From positions 62,001 through 126,000 of IMG/VR virus record IMGVR_UViG_3300042455_001086: a stretch of 64,000 nucleotides of DNA; one strand, written 5' to 3'. The notes beneath the pieces were generated by a model. It ran no database searches, had not been told where the DNA came from, and saw only the letters and a list, made by a program, of their open reading frames with translations. Positions 29,497-48,764 of this stretch are shown piece by piece. Within the stretch, counting starts at the first letter, position 1. Each line of letters opens with the position of its first letter. The translations under genes were made by a program, and so were the position numbers.

Positions 29497-30645
29497 TTAT
29501 TTACCAAAAAGTTCAGCTTCTCGTTTTCTTCTAACTTCAAGACCTGGAAATTTTCCAAACATATGTGAGCTTTCTTTTTTTAATTGTTCTTGAGCCTTTT
29601 CCATTTGACCTCTTTTTACATATTGAATAAATTCACTCATTCTAAAATTTTTAATCCCCATATTGTATATCATTGAAATCATTGCGTTATACATATTTTG
29701 TGTTATATTTGGTGTTATTCCTTTTTTTTCCCAATCATTTAATATTTTATTTAACTGGTCTTTTGATTCTTCAACATCATCTCTTAAAAGAATTTCAGCT
29801 TGGTTTTTTGTGATTGTTGTTTTACCTGGAATAATTCTATGATATTTAGGTAAGAAATTATAATTTCCACCAACATCACCTCTATTTGGATTACTAAACA
29901 CAGCGTGTCCATAACCAATTGTTTTTGCACCATCACCGATGTCATAAGCGGTTAATATTGGTTCGCCTTTATTAACGACTGAACCTTCTTCATATTTTAG
30001 ATGATCAATTAATTTATCGTCATAATTACGAATTCGTTTTTTTGTTTCTTTTAAACCACCACCAATATTGATTGGTAGTTCTGTTTTTTCTGGTTCAACT
30101 TGTTTTGGTTCTGGTAATGATTGATAACCAATAACACCTATTAAAGAATATAAAGCATATTTTAAAATCTTTTTTCTTACATTATCGTCAAGATTTTTTA
30201 TCTTTTCTTTAAGTAATTCCAAATATTTTTTAGCTTCTTCTTTTGTTTTTACCCACAAAGTTGAAAGATCTATATTTTTTTTGACATCAGTAAAATCCCA
30301 CTCAAAATCTGGTTCCCTATCTTCATTTATAAGATTTATCGACTGAATAGCCAAATTGATGTATTCTGAACTTAATTTTAAATTTTCATTTAAGTCTCTT
30401 GTGTATTTTCTAAATCTATATGGTGAGTTTTTGACTGCTGACTTTGGAAATCTGGTTCCAATACCTTGTCTTCTGGCCATTTTAAGTGTTCTTGTATATT
30501 CTTCAAGTTCTTTTTTCTTTTTCCCATCACAATGTGCTCGTTGTGAAAAACCTTTTGGGTTATCACAGTCGATTGAATCCTTATATTCTTTGGACCATTT
30601 CTCTTCTAATTCTTCTTTTAATATTTTTCTAATTAATTGTTTCAC
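29497..30645 (-). CDS. Leader + modules + GH24 phage lysozyme
   Basis: LKYEEG..AYD.GDG..TIGYGH..YNAMISMIYNMG..GLEVRRKREAELF; GTG start. Confidence 0.85.
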   Translation of the reverse strand: MKQLIRKILKEELEEKWSKEYKDSIDCDNPKGFSQRAHCDGKKKKELEEYTRTLKMARRQGIGTRFPKSAVKNSPYRFRKYTRDLNENLKLSSEYINLAIQSINLINEDREPDFEWDFTDVKKNIDLSTLWVKTKEEAKKYLELLKEKIKNLDDNVRKKILKYALYSLIGVIGYQSLPEPKQVEPEKTELPINIGGGLKETKKRIRNYDDKLIDHLKYEEGSVVNKGEPILTAYDIGDGAKTIGYGHAVFSNPNRGDVGGNYNFLPKYHRIIPGKTTITKNQAEILLRDDVEESKDQLNKILNDWEKKGITPNITQNMYNAMISMIYNMGIKNFRMSEFIQYVKRGQMEKAQEQLKKESSHMFGKFPGLEVRRKREAELFGK

Positions 30646-30648
30646 TTA

Positions 30649-32073
30649 TTAACCCTTATCAATCTTATCTTGAAGAACTTTCACAAACTCGTTTTGAATC
30701 ATTTTCACAAACTTAATATATGGTGCATCCTCTTTTTCTGGATCATATTTATATTTTCCTCGTGGTGGTCTTGTTGATCTACCAAGGTAATTTAGCGAAC
30801 TTACATTAGAAATGCAAGAATGTCCCCCACTATTAGCTTGTATTAAATCCCACGCATTAATTGTAATTTCATCTAGCATTTTTTTCTCATCTTCATCCAA
30901 ATCACTAAATGGTTTTTCCATAATCTGATATATGCTTCTTATATATTCTTTGTTCCTTTGTGGTGATTTAAAATCATTACCATATGTTGCAACAAAATCT
31001 TTAAAAGTGAAACCAACAGATTCTGAACCAAATTCTTTACCACTTTCTGAAACCCACTTAATTGTTGATAATGGAATTTCTCTTGATTTTAATTGTCCTT
31101 CCCATTTTGATAATACCTCTTGTGCTATTTCACCAAGATTAATACCCTTTAATTCTCTTTCTTTTTTAAATGGATTACAAGAAACCTGAACCAAACCTAA
31201 TGGCCAAGCAATAACAATAAAGTCAGCTTCTGGATTGTTTTTAAATGGTGTATATCTGTCATATGAACCTGGTGCAAATGTGCTACCACCACCATATTGG
31301 ACGATTATTCTATCTTGAATTTTCACATTTGGATGTGATTTCATTTGTTGGATATAATCTTCTCTATTTTTTTGTAGTTGTGGTATTTTAGCATAGTTCT
31401 TCTCAACCATTATCCTTTTAATATTATTTAAAATACTCAACAATGATGGTTGTGATTTCATTACTAATTCTTCCAAGAAACCTGGTTTGTTTTTGAACGC
31501 CAATAATAACTTATTGGTTACCAGTCCCATCATAAACTTATTTCTTCTTGCTGATTGACTTTTATCCAATTTGAATAAATAATTAATAACCTCATCAACT
31601 GAAATATCTTTTGCAATATAATTTGCTGAATCGACCGTAGATATAAGTTCAATATCTTCCGGTGTGAATATTTCTTTTGGTGACACAATTTGTGATATTG
31701 TTTCAACATTTGATCTTGAATGTCTGAATGATGTTGCCGTGTCTTTTTCAACACCGGCTTGTCTGTCGTGATGATCGGTGTGAATTACGAACATCGGCTT
31801 GCCATTAGCGAAGTCAACTAAAACTGGCATAACATCACCATTAGCGTCTAATTTCTTAACCGCAAATTCTTTATCCCCATACTGGATTACTTCTGCATCA
31901 ACTACTTCAATTCCTTTTTGCTCAAGATAATGTTTCATTGCAAGAGCTGTCGTAACTCCGTCAAGTCAAAGGTCCTGGTGAAAGTAGATTTTCGCTTTCT
32001 TGTAGCGCTTTGCGATGTTATTAATATCGCGTAATCCACTTTCAACCAGGACATATCTATTTTTTCTGGTCAT
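30649..32073 (-). CDS. DHH-family phosphoesterase with in-frame TGA at 31966-31968
   Basis: IYFHQDL*LDGVTTA (motif I), HTDHH, GGH; upstream frame open to ATG 32073. Confidence 0.8.
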
Positions 32074-32163
32074 AATTTATTTTTTTTCATATAAATACTT
32101 TATAAATCCAATTAATTAATCTAGTCCTATTGAATATTTCTATTATTTTTACTACACTTCATT

Positions 32164-32475
32164 ATGCTTTCACCAGAAACTTTTAAAAAAATAGGAATTT
32201 TTATCAAAAGGCACAGTAATAATAATATTCTTACGATTGATAATATCACTTATCAAGCTAAGACTGATGCGAATTACGATAATTTTTTTGATAATCTAAA
32301 TCTTGTTACCATTAAACATATATTGATTTTGGATTGTAGATGTAGAGACAATTCATATTTTAAAGGTTATGAAGAATTGGGTAAAATGATTCACCATATG
32401 TTTAAGTATGAATTAATTGGGATTGATGATGTTATTGTTAGATATAACTGTTCAACATATTTTTGTAAGGATTGA
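32164..32475 (+). CDS. Hypothetical protein
   Basis: 103-aa ORF. Confidence 0.55.
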   Translation: MLSPETFKKIGIFIKRHSNNNILTIDNITYQAKTDANYDNFFDNLNLVTIKHILILDCRCRDNSYFKGYEELGKMIHHMFKYELIGIDDVIVRYNCSTYFCKD

Positions 32476-32480
32476 AGATA

Positions 32481-33479
32481 TTAAGCGACACTACTAACTA
32501 AATCAAACTTATCCGAATCACTTACAGCTTTTGATCTATGAAACCCAACAGCACCACCGGCATTTATATCAGCAAAATAAGTTGCGGAATCTTTTTTGTC
32601 TTTAAACTTAGGAAATGAATCACCTGACTTTCCTTTTGTTAAAAACACCACAGCAATTTCAGATGCCACATTTGGGTCATTAACTAAATCTGGATTACCA
32701 ACTAAATCTTTACCAATTAAATTACCATATTTTTCATAATTTCCTCTACCGGTCAATTGGTTGAGACCTCTTCCTCTATATTTCCAACCATCATCACCAC
32801 CTTGATTTCCAGCGGTTTTAGCATATACAACATTAAAGAATTTTTCAGGATCTTTTTTTAAGTTGGTTAATTCACTATCCGAATATTTTGCAACTCTGGA
32901 ACCAAAAATACTTTTAATTCTTGAATTTGATGTTCCGGCATATGATAGTTCTGATTTTGGTTTAAAACCCGATTCTTTTGAGATTACAGATAATATGCCA
33001 ATTTTTGCTAAAGGGTCTTTTATTCCAAATTTATTCATATGGTTAATAATTAAACCGATATTTCTTTTTTGTTCTCCGTCAAAACCACCAACTAATTTAA
33101 TATCACTATTTTTGGGTATTTGACTATCTTCTTGATCCGAACTAATACTATTTTCAAATAAAAACTTTTCTGTCAATTTCTTAATTGTTTCTAAGTCAAA
33201 ATAACCAGATTCTTCTAAATTATTTTCGGATTGGAAGTCTTTAATGGTTGATTGTGTGTTTTCGTCTAAAATCCCGTTTAACTCTATTTGTTTTTGTGTC
33301 ACAATTCTTAAAACAATTTGCATTATTCTAATCTCTTTGTTTGCACTATTTTTTGTAATCTCTTTGTTTTTACTAACCAAATCTTGATAGACCTTTATGA
33401 ATTTTTCAAATAGTTTTTTTCTATCATCATTTTCGTTGATGAGTTTTTTAAACTGGCTTTCAGTAATTACAATTTTCAT
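32481..33479 (-). CDS. Leader + peptidoglycan-binding domain + GH19 muramidase
   Basis: IKDFQSENNLEESG; KES; DGWKYRGRGLNQLTGRGNY; DLVGNPDLV. Confidence 0.85.
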   Translation of the reverse strand: MKIVITESQFKKLINENDDRKKLFEKFIKVYQDLVSKNKEITKNSANKEIRIMQIVLRIVTQKQIELNGILDENTQSTIKDFQSENNLEESGYFDLETIKKLTEKFLFENSISSDQEDSQIPKNSDIKLVGGFDGEQKRNIGLIINHMNKFGIKDPLAKIGILSVISKESGFKPKSELSYAGTSNSRIKSIFGSRVAKYSDSELTNLKKDPEKFFNVVYAKTAGNQGGDDGWKYRGRGLNQLTGRGNYEKYGNLIGKDLVGNPDLVNDPNVASEIAVVFLTKGKSGDSFPKFKDKKDSATYFADINAGGAVGFHRSKAVSDSDKFDLVSSVA

Positions 33480-48536: not shown

Positions 48537-48764
48537 TTATTTATATATTGATGATCTTGAATTAAGTCTCTGACTCAATAAAGTTTCCTTGAAGCACTTA
48601 ACAAATTCCTCTTTTATATCTTCAACAACTATTCCATCACCCCACACCATTACGTCTTTCTTAACCCTATCTTTCCAATGATAGTTTGTTGGGTAGTTGT
48701 ATAAAAGGAAGTTCTCCATTTCCTCCATAGTAAAGGAAAGTTCTATTTTAATTTGTTCACTCAT
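48537..48764 (-). CDS. Hypothetical protein
   Basis: 75-aa ORF. Confidence 0.55.
   Translation of the reverse strand: MSEQIKIELSFTMEEMENFLLYNYPTNYHWKDRVKKDVMVWGDGIVVEDIKEEFVKCFKETLLSQRLNSRSSIYK

What the first reader, a model, noticed from the sequence alone, without database searches (positions are those of the whole stretch)
30649..32073. DHH phosphoesterase with a 6-nt insertion carrying TGA inside catalytic motif I
Seen: ...IYFHQDL-TGA-L-DGVTTALAMKHY...; the DNA is gacc-t-ttgac-ttgac-gga where HQDLDG needs gacc-ttgac-gga. The 45 codons upstream of the ORF-track start are in frame and supply the H-x-D-x-DG motif. Established: motif I is essential for DHH metal binding, and conserved motifs are favoured intron/intein homing sites. 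Inference: a scar or collapsed assembly of a mobile intron/IS at this site, a recent inactivation, or a split or readthrough enzyme. The flanking 31.95-32.05 kb stretch also looks richer in CG than its surroundings.
Basis: partly seen in the sequence, partly recalled or inferred. Interest (0 to 1): 0.6.

Follow-up and report, generated by a model that had tools for sequence, protein, structure and literature searches.

The report
Ribosome hop in phage DHH gene
The stop codon inside this phage enzyme gene is not damage: it is a conserved, mobile signal at which the ribosome most likely skips six bases and carries on, a kind of decoding known from very few natural genes.

Summary
On the minus strand the gene reads CAC CAG GAC CTT TGA CTT GAC GGA (H Q D L stop L D G), and uninterrupted relatives read HQDLDG. 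It is not an assembly error, because independent assemblies and contigs of four sequencing runs carry it.

It is not a recent inactivation either. About 90 related loci from viral and metagenome collections carry an interruption at exactly this spot, always as Leu codon (CTN), stop (TGA, TAG or TAA), 0-5 more bases, second Leu-type codon, then GAY GGN. The skipped distance is 6, 8, 9 or 11 nt, so some variants change frame and plain readthrough cannot explain the family. Both reading frames stay open, and the downstream part is under strong purifying selection (dN/dS 0.05-0.2).

A 16-19 bp RNA helix ends at the take-off codon in 44 of 45 distinct interrupted alleles and is absent from uninterrupted alleles.

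The trait is scattered over the protein tree and sits in a replaced sequence patch. In 12 of 31 interrupted loci, and in none of 116 plain loci, a ~300-aa HNH-like gene lies directly upstream.

Best reading: programmed translational bypassing (a natural "stop-hop") carried by a mobile cassette, analogous to phage T4 gene 60/mobA. No protein evidence exists yet.

The parts
30649..32073 (-). Whole interrupted gene for a DHH/DHHA1-type phosphoesterase. The predicted joined product is 472 aa.
31969..32073 (-). ORF1: 35 codons from the ATG to the take-off Leu codon (M...IYFHQDL). It supplies the first Asp of motif I.
   Evidence: It is open and starts at an ATG in all interrupted relatives.
32033..32052 (-). 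5' arm of the long-range RNA helix (GUCCUGGU-UGAAAGUGGAUU). It overlaps the codons for VLVESGL.
   Evidence: Window fold: -35 kcal/mol, z -6.1.
31993..32030 (-). Two small internal hairpins (32030-32012 and 32007-31993) enclosed by the long helix, forming a three-way junction.
   Evidence: Hairpins occur at the same places, with different sequences, in relatives.
31972..31990 (-). 3' arm of the helix (AAUCUACUUUCA-CCAGGAC). It ends on the base before the take-off codon and contains an SD-like AGGA.
   Evidence: Synonymous sites here are fixed only in interrupted alleles.
31969..31971 (-). Take-off codon CTT (Leu).
   Evidence: It is always CTN in interrupted alleles. Plain alleles use TTA or TTG in 109 of 115 cases.
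31966..31968 (-). In-frame stop TGA, presumed to sit in the A site at take-off (context CUU UGA C).
   Evidence: Relatives have TGA, TAG or TAA here.
31963..31965 (-). Landing codon CTT (Leu), matched to the take-off codon.
   Evidence: It is a CTN codon in nearly all variants, 3 to 8 nt after the take-off codon.
30649..31962 (-). ORF2: resumes at GAC GGA (D G) and runs 437 codons to TAA. It holds the rest of motif I, motifs II and III (VLVDF, HTDHHD) and the GGH motif.
   Evidence: In interrupted-only clades dN/dS is 0.05-0.2.

Best explanation
The gene is expressed by programmed translational bypassing, a short "stop-hop". The ribosome translates 35 codons and reaches CUU (Leu) in the P site with UGA in the A site. 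Peptidyl-tRNA-Leu then lets go of CUU. The mRNA slides 6 nt, the same tRNA re-pairs with the second CUU, and decoding resumes at GAC GGA. The product carries the normal motif I, HQDLDG.

The likely stimulator is a 16-19 bp long-range helix closing a three-way junction. Its 3' strand ends on the base before the take-off codon, so that strand lies inside the ribosome at take-off. Re-zipping of the helix as mRNA leaves the ribosome would pull the mRNA forward. The AGGA inside that strand may also pair with 16S rRNA.

The unit made of helix, CTN, stop and CTN is a mobile cassette. In many relatives it sits directly downstream of a ~300-aa HNH-like gene, probably a homing endonuclease that cuts the uninterrupted motif-I sequence. 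The insert would protect its carrier from that cut, and the hop keeps the enzyme functional. The window's phage carries the cassette without the endonuclease gene.

Shown here: the conserved anatomy, selection on both parts of the gene, the helix, the mosaic distribution, and the linkage to the upstream gene. Inferred: the hop itself, the role of the helix, and the nuclease activity and its target.
For: 1. The interruption is conserved and varies in an informative way. A degenerate DNA pattern that requires more than one codon between HQD and DG found 45 true homologues in IMG/VR and 45 in JGI metagenomes, giving 45 distinct elements. All have CTN, then a stop (TGA, TAG or TAA), then 0, 2, 3 or 5 nt, then a second codon (CTN in all but two variants), then GAY GGN. 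The skipped distance is 6, 8, 9 or 11 nt, so two classes change frame. Skipping restores HQDLDG exactly in every case.

2. Both frames stay open: 34-43 codons from an ATG upstream and at least 436 codons downstream. Within interrupted-only clades the downstream part has dN/dS 0.05-0.2 at dS about 1-1.5. The 30 nt after the landing codon, which span the 8 codons with no in-frame start, are about 93% identical at codon positions 1+2 (derived from the two figures) but 47% at position 3.

3. The RNA helix is specific to interrupted alleles. At least 15 of 16 pairs are formed in 44 of 45 distinct interrupted elements. Plain alleles average 8.8 of 16, with helix energy +6.9 against -18.1 kcal/mol. 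98.8% of cells pair, against 32-47% when the partners are slid. One pair covaries, G-C 12 and A-U 12. The window's element folds at -35 kcal/mol, z -6.1.

4. Synonymous sites are fixed only in the last ~18 nt before take-off: CAG 25/25 against 11/115, TAC 25/25 against 30/115, ATC or GTC 24/25 against ATC 6/115.

5. The one lineage with a degraded helix (L016, 12 of 16 pairs) also has a second in-frame stop.

6. Mobility. The trait needs at least 13 changes on a 117-protein tree. Near-identical sister genes differ only in a ~100-nt patch around the site. The upstream ~300-aa ORF is present in 12 of 31 interrupted loci and 0 of 116 plain loci, p = 1e-9. Four of four further homologues of that ORF, taken from other assemblies, lie directly upstream of interrupted genes. 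In L054 against L105 a ~1.05-kb element replaces 78 nt.

7. TGA is an ordinary stop in this genome and there is no suppressor tRNA. The phage encodes tRNA-Leu(AAG) and tRNA-Leu(TAG).

8. Literature. [quoted passage not shown]
Against: - There is no protein, reporter or ribosome-profiling evidence, so the hop is inferred from comparative anatomy alone.
- The window's own variant skips 6 nt and stays in frame. For this copy alone, UGA readthrough (giving HQDL-X-LDG) is not excluded.
- A few relatives have imperfect landing codons: ATA (L188, L232) and GTT (L230).
- Helix covariation rests mainly on one pair. Most pairs never vary, and the N-terminal part has low dS (0.05-0.26). Part of the conservation may therefore reflect recent spread of one cassette rather than selection.
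- The helix could serve another purpose, for example for the upstream gene's mRNA.
- The HNH assignment of the upstream ORF is weak. There is no Pfam, NCBIfam or PDB sequence hit, and the structural Z is only about 4.
- The window's phage lacks that ORF next to the gene.
- The host and its translation apparatus are unknown.
Confidence: 0.8

Rival explanations
1. Stop-codon readthrough or local recoding of UGA. A near-cognate or suppressor tRNA inserts a residue, giving HQDL-X-LDG with two extra residues in motif I.
For: The window's insert is in frame. By my recollection, not tested here, UGA followed by C is a weak termination context in E. coli.
Against: The same cassette occurs with 8- and 11-nt skips that change frame, and with TAG or TAA in place of TGA. 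TGA ends 46 of 244 long ORFs in this genome, and no tRNA has a UCA anticodon. Readthrough gives no reason for a duplicated Leu codon or for the switch from TTR to CTN. Two extra residues between the two metal-binding Asp of motif I would probably harm catalysis (inference).
Confidence: 0.06
2. Split gene. Translation ends at the stop, releasing a 35-aa peptide. A second polypeptide starts at the landing CTN or at the ATG nine codons later. The two pieces either assemble non-covalently or only the larger piece matters.
For: Gene callers find a 429-aa ORF from M46. An AGGA lies 7 nt before the landing codon.
Against: No ATG, GTG or TTG lies between the stop and M46, yet those 8 codons are conserved as coding sequence. 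CTT, CTA and CTG are very poor start codons (established knowledge). The AGGA is sequestered in the helix. The 35-codon ORF keeps the family's conserved residues and the first motif-I Asp. The exact duplication of the Leu codon has no role in this model.
Confidence: 0.07
3. Recent inactivating mutation. The gene is a pseudogene carried by a selfish element that simply disrupts it.
For: An in-frame stop lies in an essential motif. One related lineage (L016 group) does look decayed, with a second stop and a degraded helix.
Against: Dozens of diverged interrupted alleles keep both frames open. Their dN/dS is 0.05-0.2 at saturated dS. The helix and matched codons are maintained in 44 of 45 distinct elements.
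Confidence: 0.04
4. Assembly or sequencing artefact, or RNA-level removal of the six bases (a tiny intron or editing).
For: None beyond the oddity of the site.
Against: Identical sequence occurs in independent assemblies and in contigs of four runs from different studies. No splicing system is known for 3-8 nt inserts (my own knowledge), and the insert lies outside the helix.
Confidence: 0.02

Closest known systems
Phage T4 gene 60 bypass with the mobA homing-endonuclease cassette
   Same: [quoted passage not shown] In both the interruption sits in a conserved part of an enzyme gene, is linked to a free-standing endonuclease-like gene directly upstream, and is scattered in a mobile pattern that includes copies without the endonuclease (for T4; here).
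   Different: The gap here is 3-8 nt (a hop of 6-11 nt) instead of 50 nt. The codons are CUN (Leu) rather than GGA (Gly). There is no take-off or A-site stem-loop within the gap. The 5' structure is a long-range helix that abuts the take-off codon, not a hairpin 9 nt away. The gene is a DHH phosphoesterase, not a topoisomerase subunit. The upstream protein shows no detectable sequence similarity to annotated HNH families.
Synthetic "stop-hops" in E. coli (Weiss et al. 1987, as described in PMC5009743 and bioRxiv 10.1101/2024.12.09.627546)
   Same: Nine nucleotides (codon, stop, matching codon) specify one amino acid, and peptidyl-tRNA re-pairs at the matching codon.
   Different: Those were artificial, low-efficiency events without stimulators. 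The 2016 review states that no natural in-frame stop-hop was known. Here the site is natural, conserved and has a dedicated RNA helix.
prfB (RF2) +1 frameshift site CUU UGA C (recalled from memory)
   Same: Both have the heptanucleotide CUU UGA C with an upstream SD-like purine run, and a slow UGA in the A site.
   Different: A +1 shift here would read L-D-L-T-E... and terminate after a few codons, so it is unproductive. The productive event is a +6 hop. The SD-like AGGA is 1 nt, not 3 nt, from the CUU, and it is part of a helix.
Mitochondrial "byps" of Magnusiomyces capitatus and candidate bypassing in Streptomyces phage Hau3 terminase
   Same: Both are short-to-medium non-coding inserts inside genes that translation skips. 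Landing matches may be imperfect, and the Hau3 case has an SD-like element 5' of a short gap.
   Different: Byps are 27-55 nt, numerous, and reported as seemingly independent of mRNA context. Hau3 relies on a rare UUA codon. Neither has the helix found here or sits in a DHH gene.

Membership tests
Programmed translational bypassing (gene 60 type) | Take-off and landing codons readable by the same tRNA | tested here: met
   The window has CTT...CTT. Across 45 distinct elements the pair is CTN...CTN, except for the ATA and GTT landing variants.
Programmed translational bypassing (gene 60 type) | Stop or slow codon in the A site directly after the take-off codon | tested here: met
   TGA, TAG or TAA follows take-off in every element.
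Programmed translational bypassing (gene 60 type) | Skipping the gap restores colinearity with uninterrupted homologues, including gaps that are not multiples of three | tested here: met
   HQDL|DG is restored for hops of 6, 8, 9 and 11 nt.
Programmed translational bypassing (gene 60 type) | [quoted passage not shown] | tested here: met
   A 16-19 bp helix is specific to interrupted alleles. Its stimulatory function was not tested.
Programmed translational bypassing (gene 60 type) | Nascent-peptide signal | tested here: inconclusive
   Interrupted alleles favour Lys at -10 and -7 (RYKKAK against RYPKAE). This cannot be separated from constraints at the RNA level.
Programmed translational bypassing (gene 60 type) | One polypeptide made from both ORFs | not testable with these tools
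   This needs mass spectrometry or a reporter assay.
DHH/DHHA1 phosphoesterase superfamily | Motifs I-IV: DxD, D, DHH, GGGH-like | tested here: met
   HQDLDG, VLVDF, HTDHHD and NSGGH are invariant in the family alignment.
DHH/DHHA1 phosphoesterase superfamily | Pfam DHH score above the gathering threshold | tested here: not met
   23.9 bits against 28.1 (E 5e-5) for uninterrupted P0002. The fragment starting at the landing codon scores 16.1 bits. It is therefore filed at superfamily level only.
DHH/DHHA1 phosphoesterase superfamily | DHH fold | tested here: inconclusive
   In the Foldseek PDB search nearly all of the 50 listed hits, and all of the best 30, are DHH enzymes (DhhP, PggH, RecJ/Cdc45, GdpP, NrnA) at probability up to 1.0. 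The model is poor (pLDDT 64.6) and TM-scores are 0.15-0.29.
Free-standing homing endonuclease with a protected target (mobA-like cassette) | Nuclease catalytic motif or fold in the linked ORF | tested here: inconclusive
   An invariant H-x-D-H...E-N-L...N..K pattern and Cys pairs are present. VIA-align matches HNH endonucleases 4h9d and 5h0o at Z 4.0 and 3.8 over residues 199-282. There is no hit by Pfam, NCBIfam, PDB sequence search or Foldseek.
Free-standing homing endonuclease with a protected target (mobA-like cassette) | The gene lies next to the interrupted target and is absent from uninterrupted alleles | tested here: met
   Present in 12 of 31 interrupted loci against 0 of 116 plain loci. 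Four of four further homologues also sit directly upstream of interrupted genes. This is not met in the window itself, which has the cassette only.
Free-standing homing endonuclease with a protected target (mobA-like cassette) | Patchy distribution with a conversion tract among close relatives | tested here: met
Free-standing homing endonuclease with a protected target (mobA-like cassette) | Cleaves the uninterrupted allele but not the interrupted one | not testable with these tools
   This needs a cleavage assay.
Genome-wide stop-codon reassignment (TGA as sense) | In-frame TGA in many genes, and a cognate suppressor tRNA | tested here: not met
   TGA ends 46 of 244 long ORFs. No excess of TGA-split frames is seen. 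None of the 24 tRNAs has a UCA anticodon.
Intron, intein or IS insertion | An insert of tens to thousands of nt with splicing or transposition signatures | tested here: not met
   The insert is 6 nt here and 6-11 nt in relatives.

The most novel reading that the evidence does not exclude
This is the first natural, conserved family of short-range "stop-hops" (6-11 nt). The hop is driven by re-zipping of a long-range mRNA helix at the ribosomal exit. The element spreads among large freshwater and marine phages as a ~1-kb selfish cassette, together with a previously unannotated beta-beta-alpha-metal-type homing endonuclease that targets the motif-I coding sequence of a DHH phosphoesterase gene.
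Probability: 0.6. Interest if true: 0.92.

Novelty: new variant of a known kind. Interest (0 to 1): 0.88.

Why it matters
- Few natural cases exist. Programmed translational bypassing is known from T4 gene 60 and its homologues, yeast mitochondrial byps, and candidate cases in Streptomyces phages. The 2016 recoding review states that no natural in-frame stop-hop was known. Four full-text searches found no description of this case.
- It offers a minimal natural system. The element has about 45 distinct variants, with four hop lengths, three stops and several landing codons. It has one clear helix and no structure within the gap. That makes it a good test of the proposal that pairing of exiting mRNA drives forward sliding.
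- It would be a second independent case of a bypass element coupled to a homing-type cassette. That would suggest recoding is a general way for selfish DNA to interrupt essential motifs without killing the gene.
- It has a practical consequence for annotation. Gene callers split or truncate these genes: 429 aa from M46 in this contig, and a 36-aa ORF in L190. The enzymes are therefore mis-annotated in viral metagenomes.

Tried and rejected
- **Exact-flank DNA pattern of the window.** It found nothing in IMG/VR or JGI metagenomes, because own or near-own records are withheld. It was replaced by degenerate patterns.
- **The 103-aa ORF at 32164-32475 (+) as the linked mobile gene.** Rejected. Among the fetched loci it occurs only in the window's own strain (L002 and the window), plus one weak match (33% identity, 1,959-2,225 of the 3,000 nt taken upstream of the gene, so about 0.8-1 kb before its start) in a plain locus (L081). 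It has no Pfam hit.
- **PHROGs on the DHH gene.** No hit.
- **PDB profile search with the DHH family alignment.** Nothing significant.
- **Pfam, PHROGs, NCBIfam, PDB sequence search and Foldseek on the upstream ~300-aa ORF.** No nuclease family was found. Only weak VIA-align matches to HNH endonucleases and low-ranked atlas look-alikes carrying HNH turned up.
- **Naive scan of the 257-kb genome for other codon-stop-matching-codon junctions.** It returned only noise. The one CTT TGA ...CTT candidate (genome 129068) lies inside an ordinary ORF in another frame. The CCT TGA CCT at genome 157758 was not pursued.
- **TGA recoding.** Rejected.
- **blastn against the phage collection.** Only distant hits, so the phage itself is not close to any deposited phage. 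PHROGs hit one of eight other window proteins.
- **Not done.** No RNA runs holding this sequence were listed, so expression could not be examined. An AU test of monophyly of interrupted alleles was not run. The statement on scatter rests on the FastTree topology, whose starred branches force at least 13 changes, and on the sister-pair comparisons.
Full report
**Setting.** The window is bases 62001-126000 of a single 257,166-bp contig with 30% G+C and 24 tRNA genes. It is JGI metagenome contig Ga0453178_0000004. Gene content (endolysin-like genes, densely packed small ORFs) and the sequencing runs that hold it (lake, pond and freshwater metagenomes from 16 studies) mark it as a large freshwater phage. 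It is not close to any deposited phage.

**The observation.**
- On the minus strand an ATG at 32073 opens 35 codons ending IYFHQDL. Then come CTT (31971-31969), TGA (31968-31966), CTT (31965-31963), GAC GGA and 435 further codons to TAA at 30649.
- A word search found about 3,800 relatives of ~468 aa. The 11 aligned ones, including the nearest (P0002, 94% identical, 472 aa), read IYFHQDLDGV with no insert.
- The uninterrupted relative matches Pfam DHH at E 5e-5, below the gathering score. It has the DxD, D, DHH and GGH motifs, and its model matches almost only DHH-family structures. "DHH phosphoesterase" is right at superfamily level. The substrate is unknown.

**Not an artefact.**
- Contigs of four runs were laid on 30400-32600.
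- X1 (possible source) and X4 (another study) span the site with no difference. X5 and X6 contain the insert, although their contigs end near it. No 6-nt deletion variant appears.
- An independent ENA assembly (L002) is identical over the site.
- TGA is a normal stop in this genome (46 of 244 long ORFs), and no tRNA reads UGA.

**Not a one-off mutation.**
- I searched IMG/VR with a degenerate pattern that demands HQD, then 4-30 nt, then DGV at a fixed distance from the family's ATGAA. Of 63 matches, 45 are true homologues.
- The same pattern, tightened, found 45 loci in JGI metagenomes, all of them homologues.
- Every one is interrupted at exactly this position and in the same way: a CTN Leu codon, then a stop, then 0, 2, 3 or 5 more bases, then a second CTN codon, then GAY GGN.
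- Twenty gap variants exist. Examples are CTT TGA CTT, CTG TGA CTT, CTT TGA CTG, CTT TAG CTT, CTT TAA CTT, CTT TGA CG CTA, CTC TGA GGG CTT and CTT TGA GGGAA CTT.
- The distance from take-off to landing codon is 6, 8, 9 or 11 nt, so two classes change reading frame. In all of them, dropping the stop, the spacer and one Leu codon restores HQDLDG.
They use TTA or TTG for this Leu in 109 of 115 distinct sequences.

**The interrupted genes are maintained.**
- In all 45 interrupted IMG/VR loci the upstream frame runs 34-43 codons from an ATG. The downstream frame runs at least 436 codons wherever the locus is complete, apart from one lineage.
- Within clades made only of interrupted genes, the downstream part has dN/dS 0.05-0.2 at dS about 1-1.5.
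- The 30 nt after the landing codon span the eight codons that have no in-frame start codon. They are conserved at first and second positions (about 93%, derived) but not at third positions (47%). They are therefore translated by ribosomes that arrive from upstream.

**A dedicated RNA signal.**
- Interrupted alleles have fixed synonymous choices just before take-off: ATC TAC TTT CAY CAG GAC. CAG is used in 25/25 against 11/115, and TAC in 25/25 against 30/115.
- Third-position identity in the last 30 nt is 0.75 among interrupted alleles, 0.56 among plain alleles and 0.35 between the two classes. It is about 0.45 everywhere else.
- The reason is a long-range helix. UCCUGRU-UGAAAGUGGA (codons for L-V/I-ESG) pairs with UCUACUUUCA-YCAGGA (codons for IYFHQD).
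- On 25 distinct sequences 98.8% of cells pair, against 32-47% when one strand is slid. The pair formed by the first base of the Val/Ile codon and the third base of the His codon covaries, G-C 12 and A-U 12.
- Over all 45 distinct elements, 44 keep at least 15 of 16 pairs.
- Plain alleles form 8.8 of 16 on average and never more than 13. Their helix energy is +6.9 against -18.1 kcal/mol.
- In the window the helix is 32052-32033 with 31990-31972. It encloses two hairpins, folds at -35 kcal/mol and has z = -6.1.
- Its 3' strand ends on the base before the take-off codon.
- The single lineage with a degraded helix (L016 group, 12 of 16 pairs) also carries a second in-frame stop 83 codons further on. 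It looks like a decaying copy.

**Mechanism.**
- The 6-nt form is literally the "stop-hop" made artificially in E. coli, in which nine nucleotides specify one amino acid.
- I propose the following sequence. With CUU in the P site and a stop in the A site, most of the helix's 3' strand is held inside the ribosome. Re-pairing of that strand with the already-exited 5' strand pulls the mRNA forward. Peptidyl-tRNA-Leu then re-pairs at the next CUN, 6-11 nt on.
- This matches the "pairing of exiting mRNA as driver" idea for gene 60.
- The AGGA in the 3' strand would lie 7-12 nt from the landing codon, the spacing of a Shine-Dalgarno element, and may help landing. That is inference.
- CUU UGA C is also the shift site of prfB (recalled from memory), but a +1 shift here is unproductive.
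- None of this has been tested biochemically. For the window's in-frame variant alone, readthrough is not formally excluded.

**Mobility.**
- On a tree of 117 joined or intact proteins the interrupted state needs at least 13 changes.
- Several interrupted genes have near-identical plain sisters that differ only in a patch around the site. In L005 against L070 the flanks are 86-100% identical, but -60 to +30 is only 46-75% identical. In the window against L003 the first ~135 nt are 66-76% identical and the rest mostly 86-100%.
- The N-terminal part has 5-30 times lower dS than the rest of the same gene pairs.
- An unbiased comparison of flanking ORF families found a ~300-aa ORF directly upstream, on the same strand and abutting the start codon. 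It occurs in 12 of 31 distinct interrupted loci of all gap types and in 0 of 116 plain loci (p = 1e-9).
- Four further homologues of this ORF, taken from other assemblies, all sit upstream of interrupted genes with the helix.
- In L054 against L105 the ORF plus the first ~24 codons of the DHH gene (1,056 nt) replace 78 nt.
- The protein has Cys pairs and an invariant H-x-D-H...ENL...N..K pattern. Its C-terminal domain matches HNH endonucleases only weakly (Z about 4), and sequence libraries do not recognise it. "Homing endonuclease" is therefore a well-motivated hypothesis, not a finding.
- The window's phage has the cassette without this gene, like the "hit and run" cases described for the gene 60 element. 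It has a distant paralogue in its tRNA cluster.

**Comparison and novelty.**
- The system works like T4 gene 60/mobA, but it differs in gene, codons, gap length (3-8 against 50 nt), stimulatory structure and associated protein.
- The 2016 recoding review states that natural in-frame stop-hops were not known. Four full-text searches found no report of bypassing in a DHH gene or of this element. Subscription-only literature was not searchable.
- I rate it a new variant of a known kind, of high interest, with the caveat that the hop rests on comparative evidence only.

Noticed in passing
G000:C1:1-127 and 257040-257166 (outside the window): The contig's two ends are exact reverse complements over 127 nt. 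A length equal to a common assembler k-mer suggests an assembly artefact rather than true terminal inverted repeats.
   Followed up: partly
G000:C1:45454-61069 (outside the window): A cluster of 24 tRNA genes includes tRNA-Leu(AAG) and tRNA-Leu(TAG), which read the CUN take-off and landing codons. It also holds an odd tRNA-like gene with a four-base anticodon call (actt) at 48647-48726 and two over-long tRNA-Cys.
   Followed up: no
G000:C1:49009-49377, minus strand (locus L187:480-1391): A 303-aa ORF inside the tRNA cluster shares 33% identity over 129 aa with the C-terminal, HNH-like part of the cassette-linked ORF of relatives. It has Zn-ribbon-like Cys pairs and no clear Pfam family.
   Followed up: partly
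window 30513-30645 (N-terminus of the lysozyme-domain gene 29497-30645, minus strand): The first ~45 codons (MKQLIRKILKEE...DCDNPKGFSQRAHC) match Synechococcus phages S-CAM9 and S-PRM1 at 78-80% nucleotide identity, while nothing else nearby does. Many contigs pile up and break at 30610-30644 in all four runs. It looks like a widely shared N-terminal module.
   Followed up: no
window 33479, 33697, 34194 and 17293 (minus-strand starts): Four ORFs begin with nearly the same peptide, MKI(I/V)ITE(S/K)Q.... Three of them lie directly upstream of the DHH gene region, and one of these is the PG-binding/GH19 endolysin-like gene.
   Followed up: no
L016, L029, L046, L064 (IMG/VR): This lineage has the hop site plus a second in-frame TAA (HSR*NV, where relatives have Ser) 83 codons after landing. 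Its helix is degraded (12 of 16 pairs). It is probably a decaying copy, or else a second recoding event.
   Followed up: partly
L188-L190, L232 (CTT TGA CG ATA) and L230 (CTC TGA GGG GTT): The landing codons do not match the take-off codon at the first base, although the helix is intact and the downstream frames are long.
   Followed up: no
L017, L033/L066, L052, L188/L189, L232: The downstream part of the DHH gene is much longer here (584-785 codons instead of ~437). In L188 and L189 there is a weak Glyco_hydro_19 hit, which suggests a fusion with the neighbouring gene or an insertion.
   Followed up: no
window 31996-32004 region; alignment positions -10 and -7 relative to take-off: Interrupted alleles mostly encode RYKKAK before IYFHQDL, where plain alleles mostly have RYPKAE. 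This could be a nascent-peptide signal or a by-product of RNA constraints.
   Followed up: no
window 31954-31987: Logan contigs of runs X5 and X6 break at or just beside the hop site (ends at 31987 and 31971, a start at 31954). This may reflect co-existing allele variants in those samples.
   Followed up: no
L015:1930-3012 and neighbours; L191, L196: DNA methyltransferase genes (C-5 or N6/N4 type) often lie just upstream of the cassette-linked ORF in relatives.
   Followed up: no
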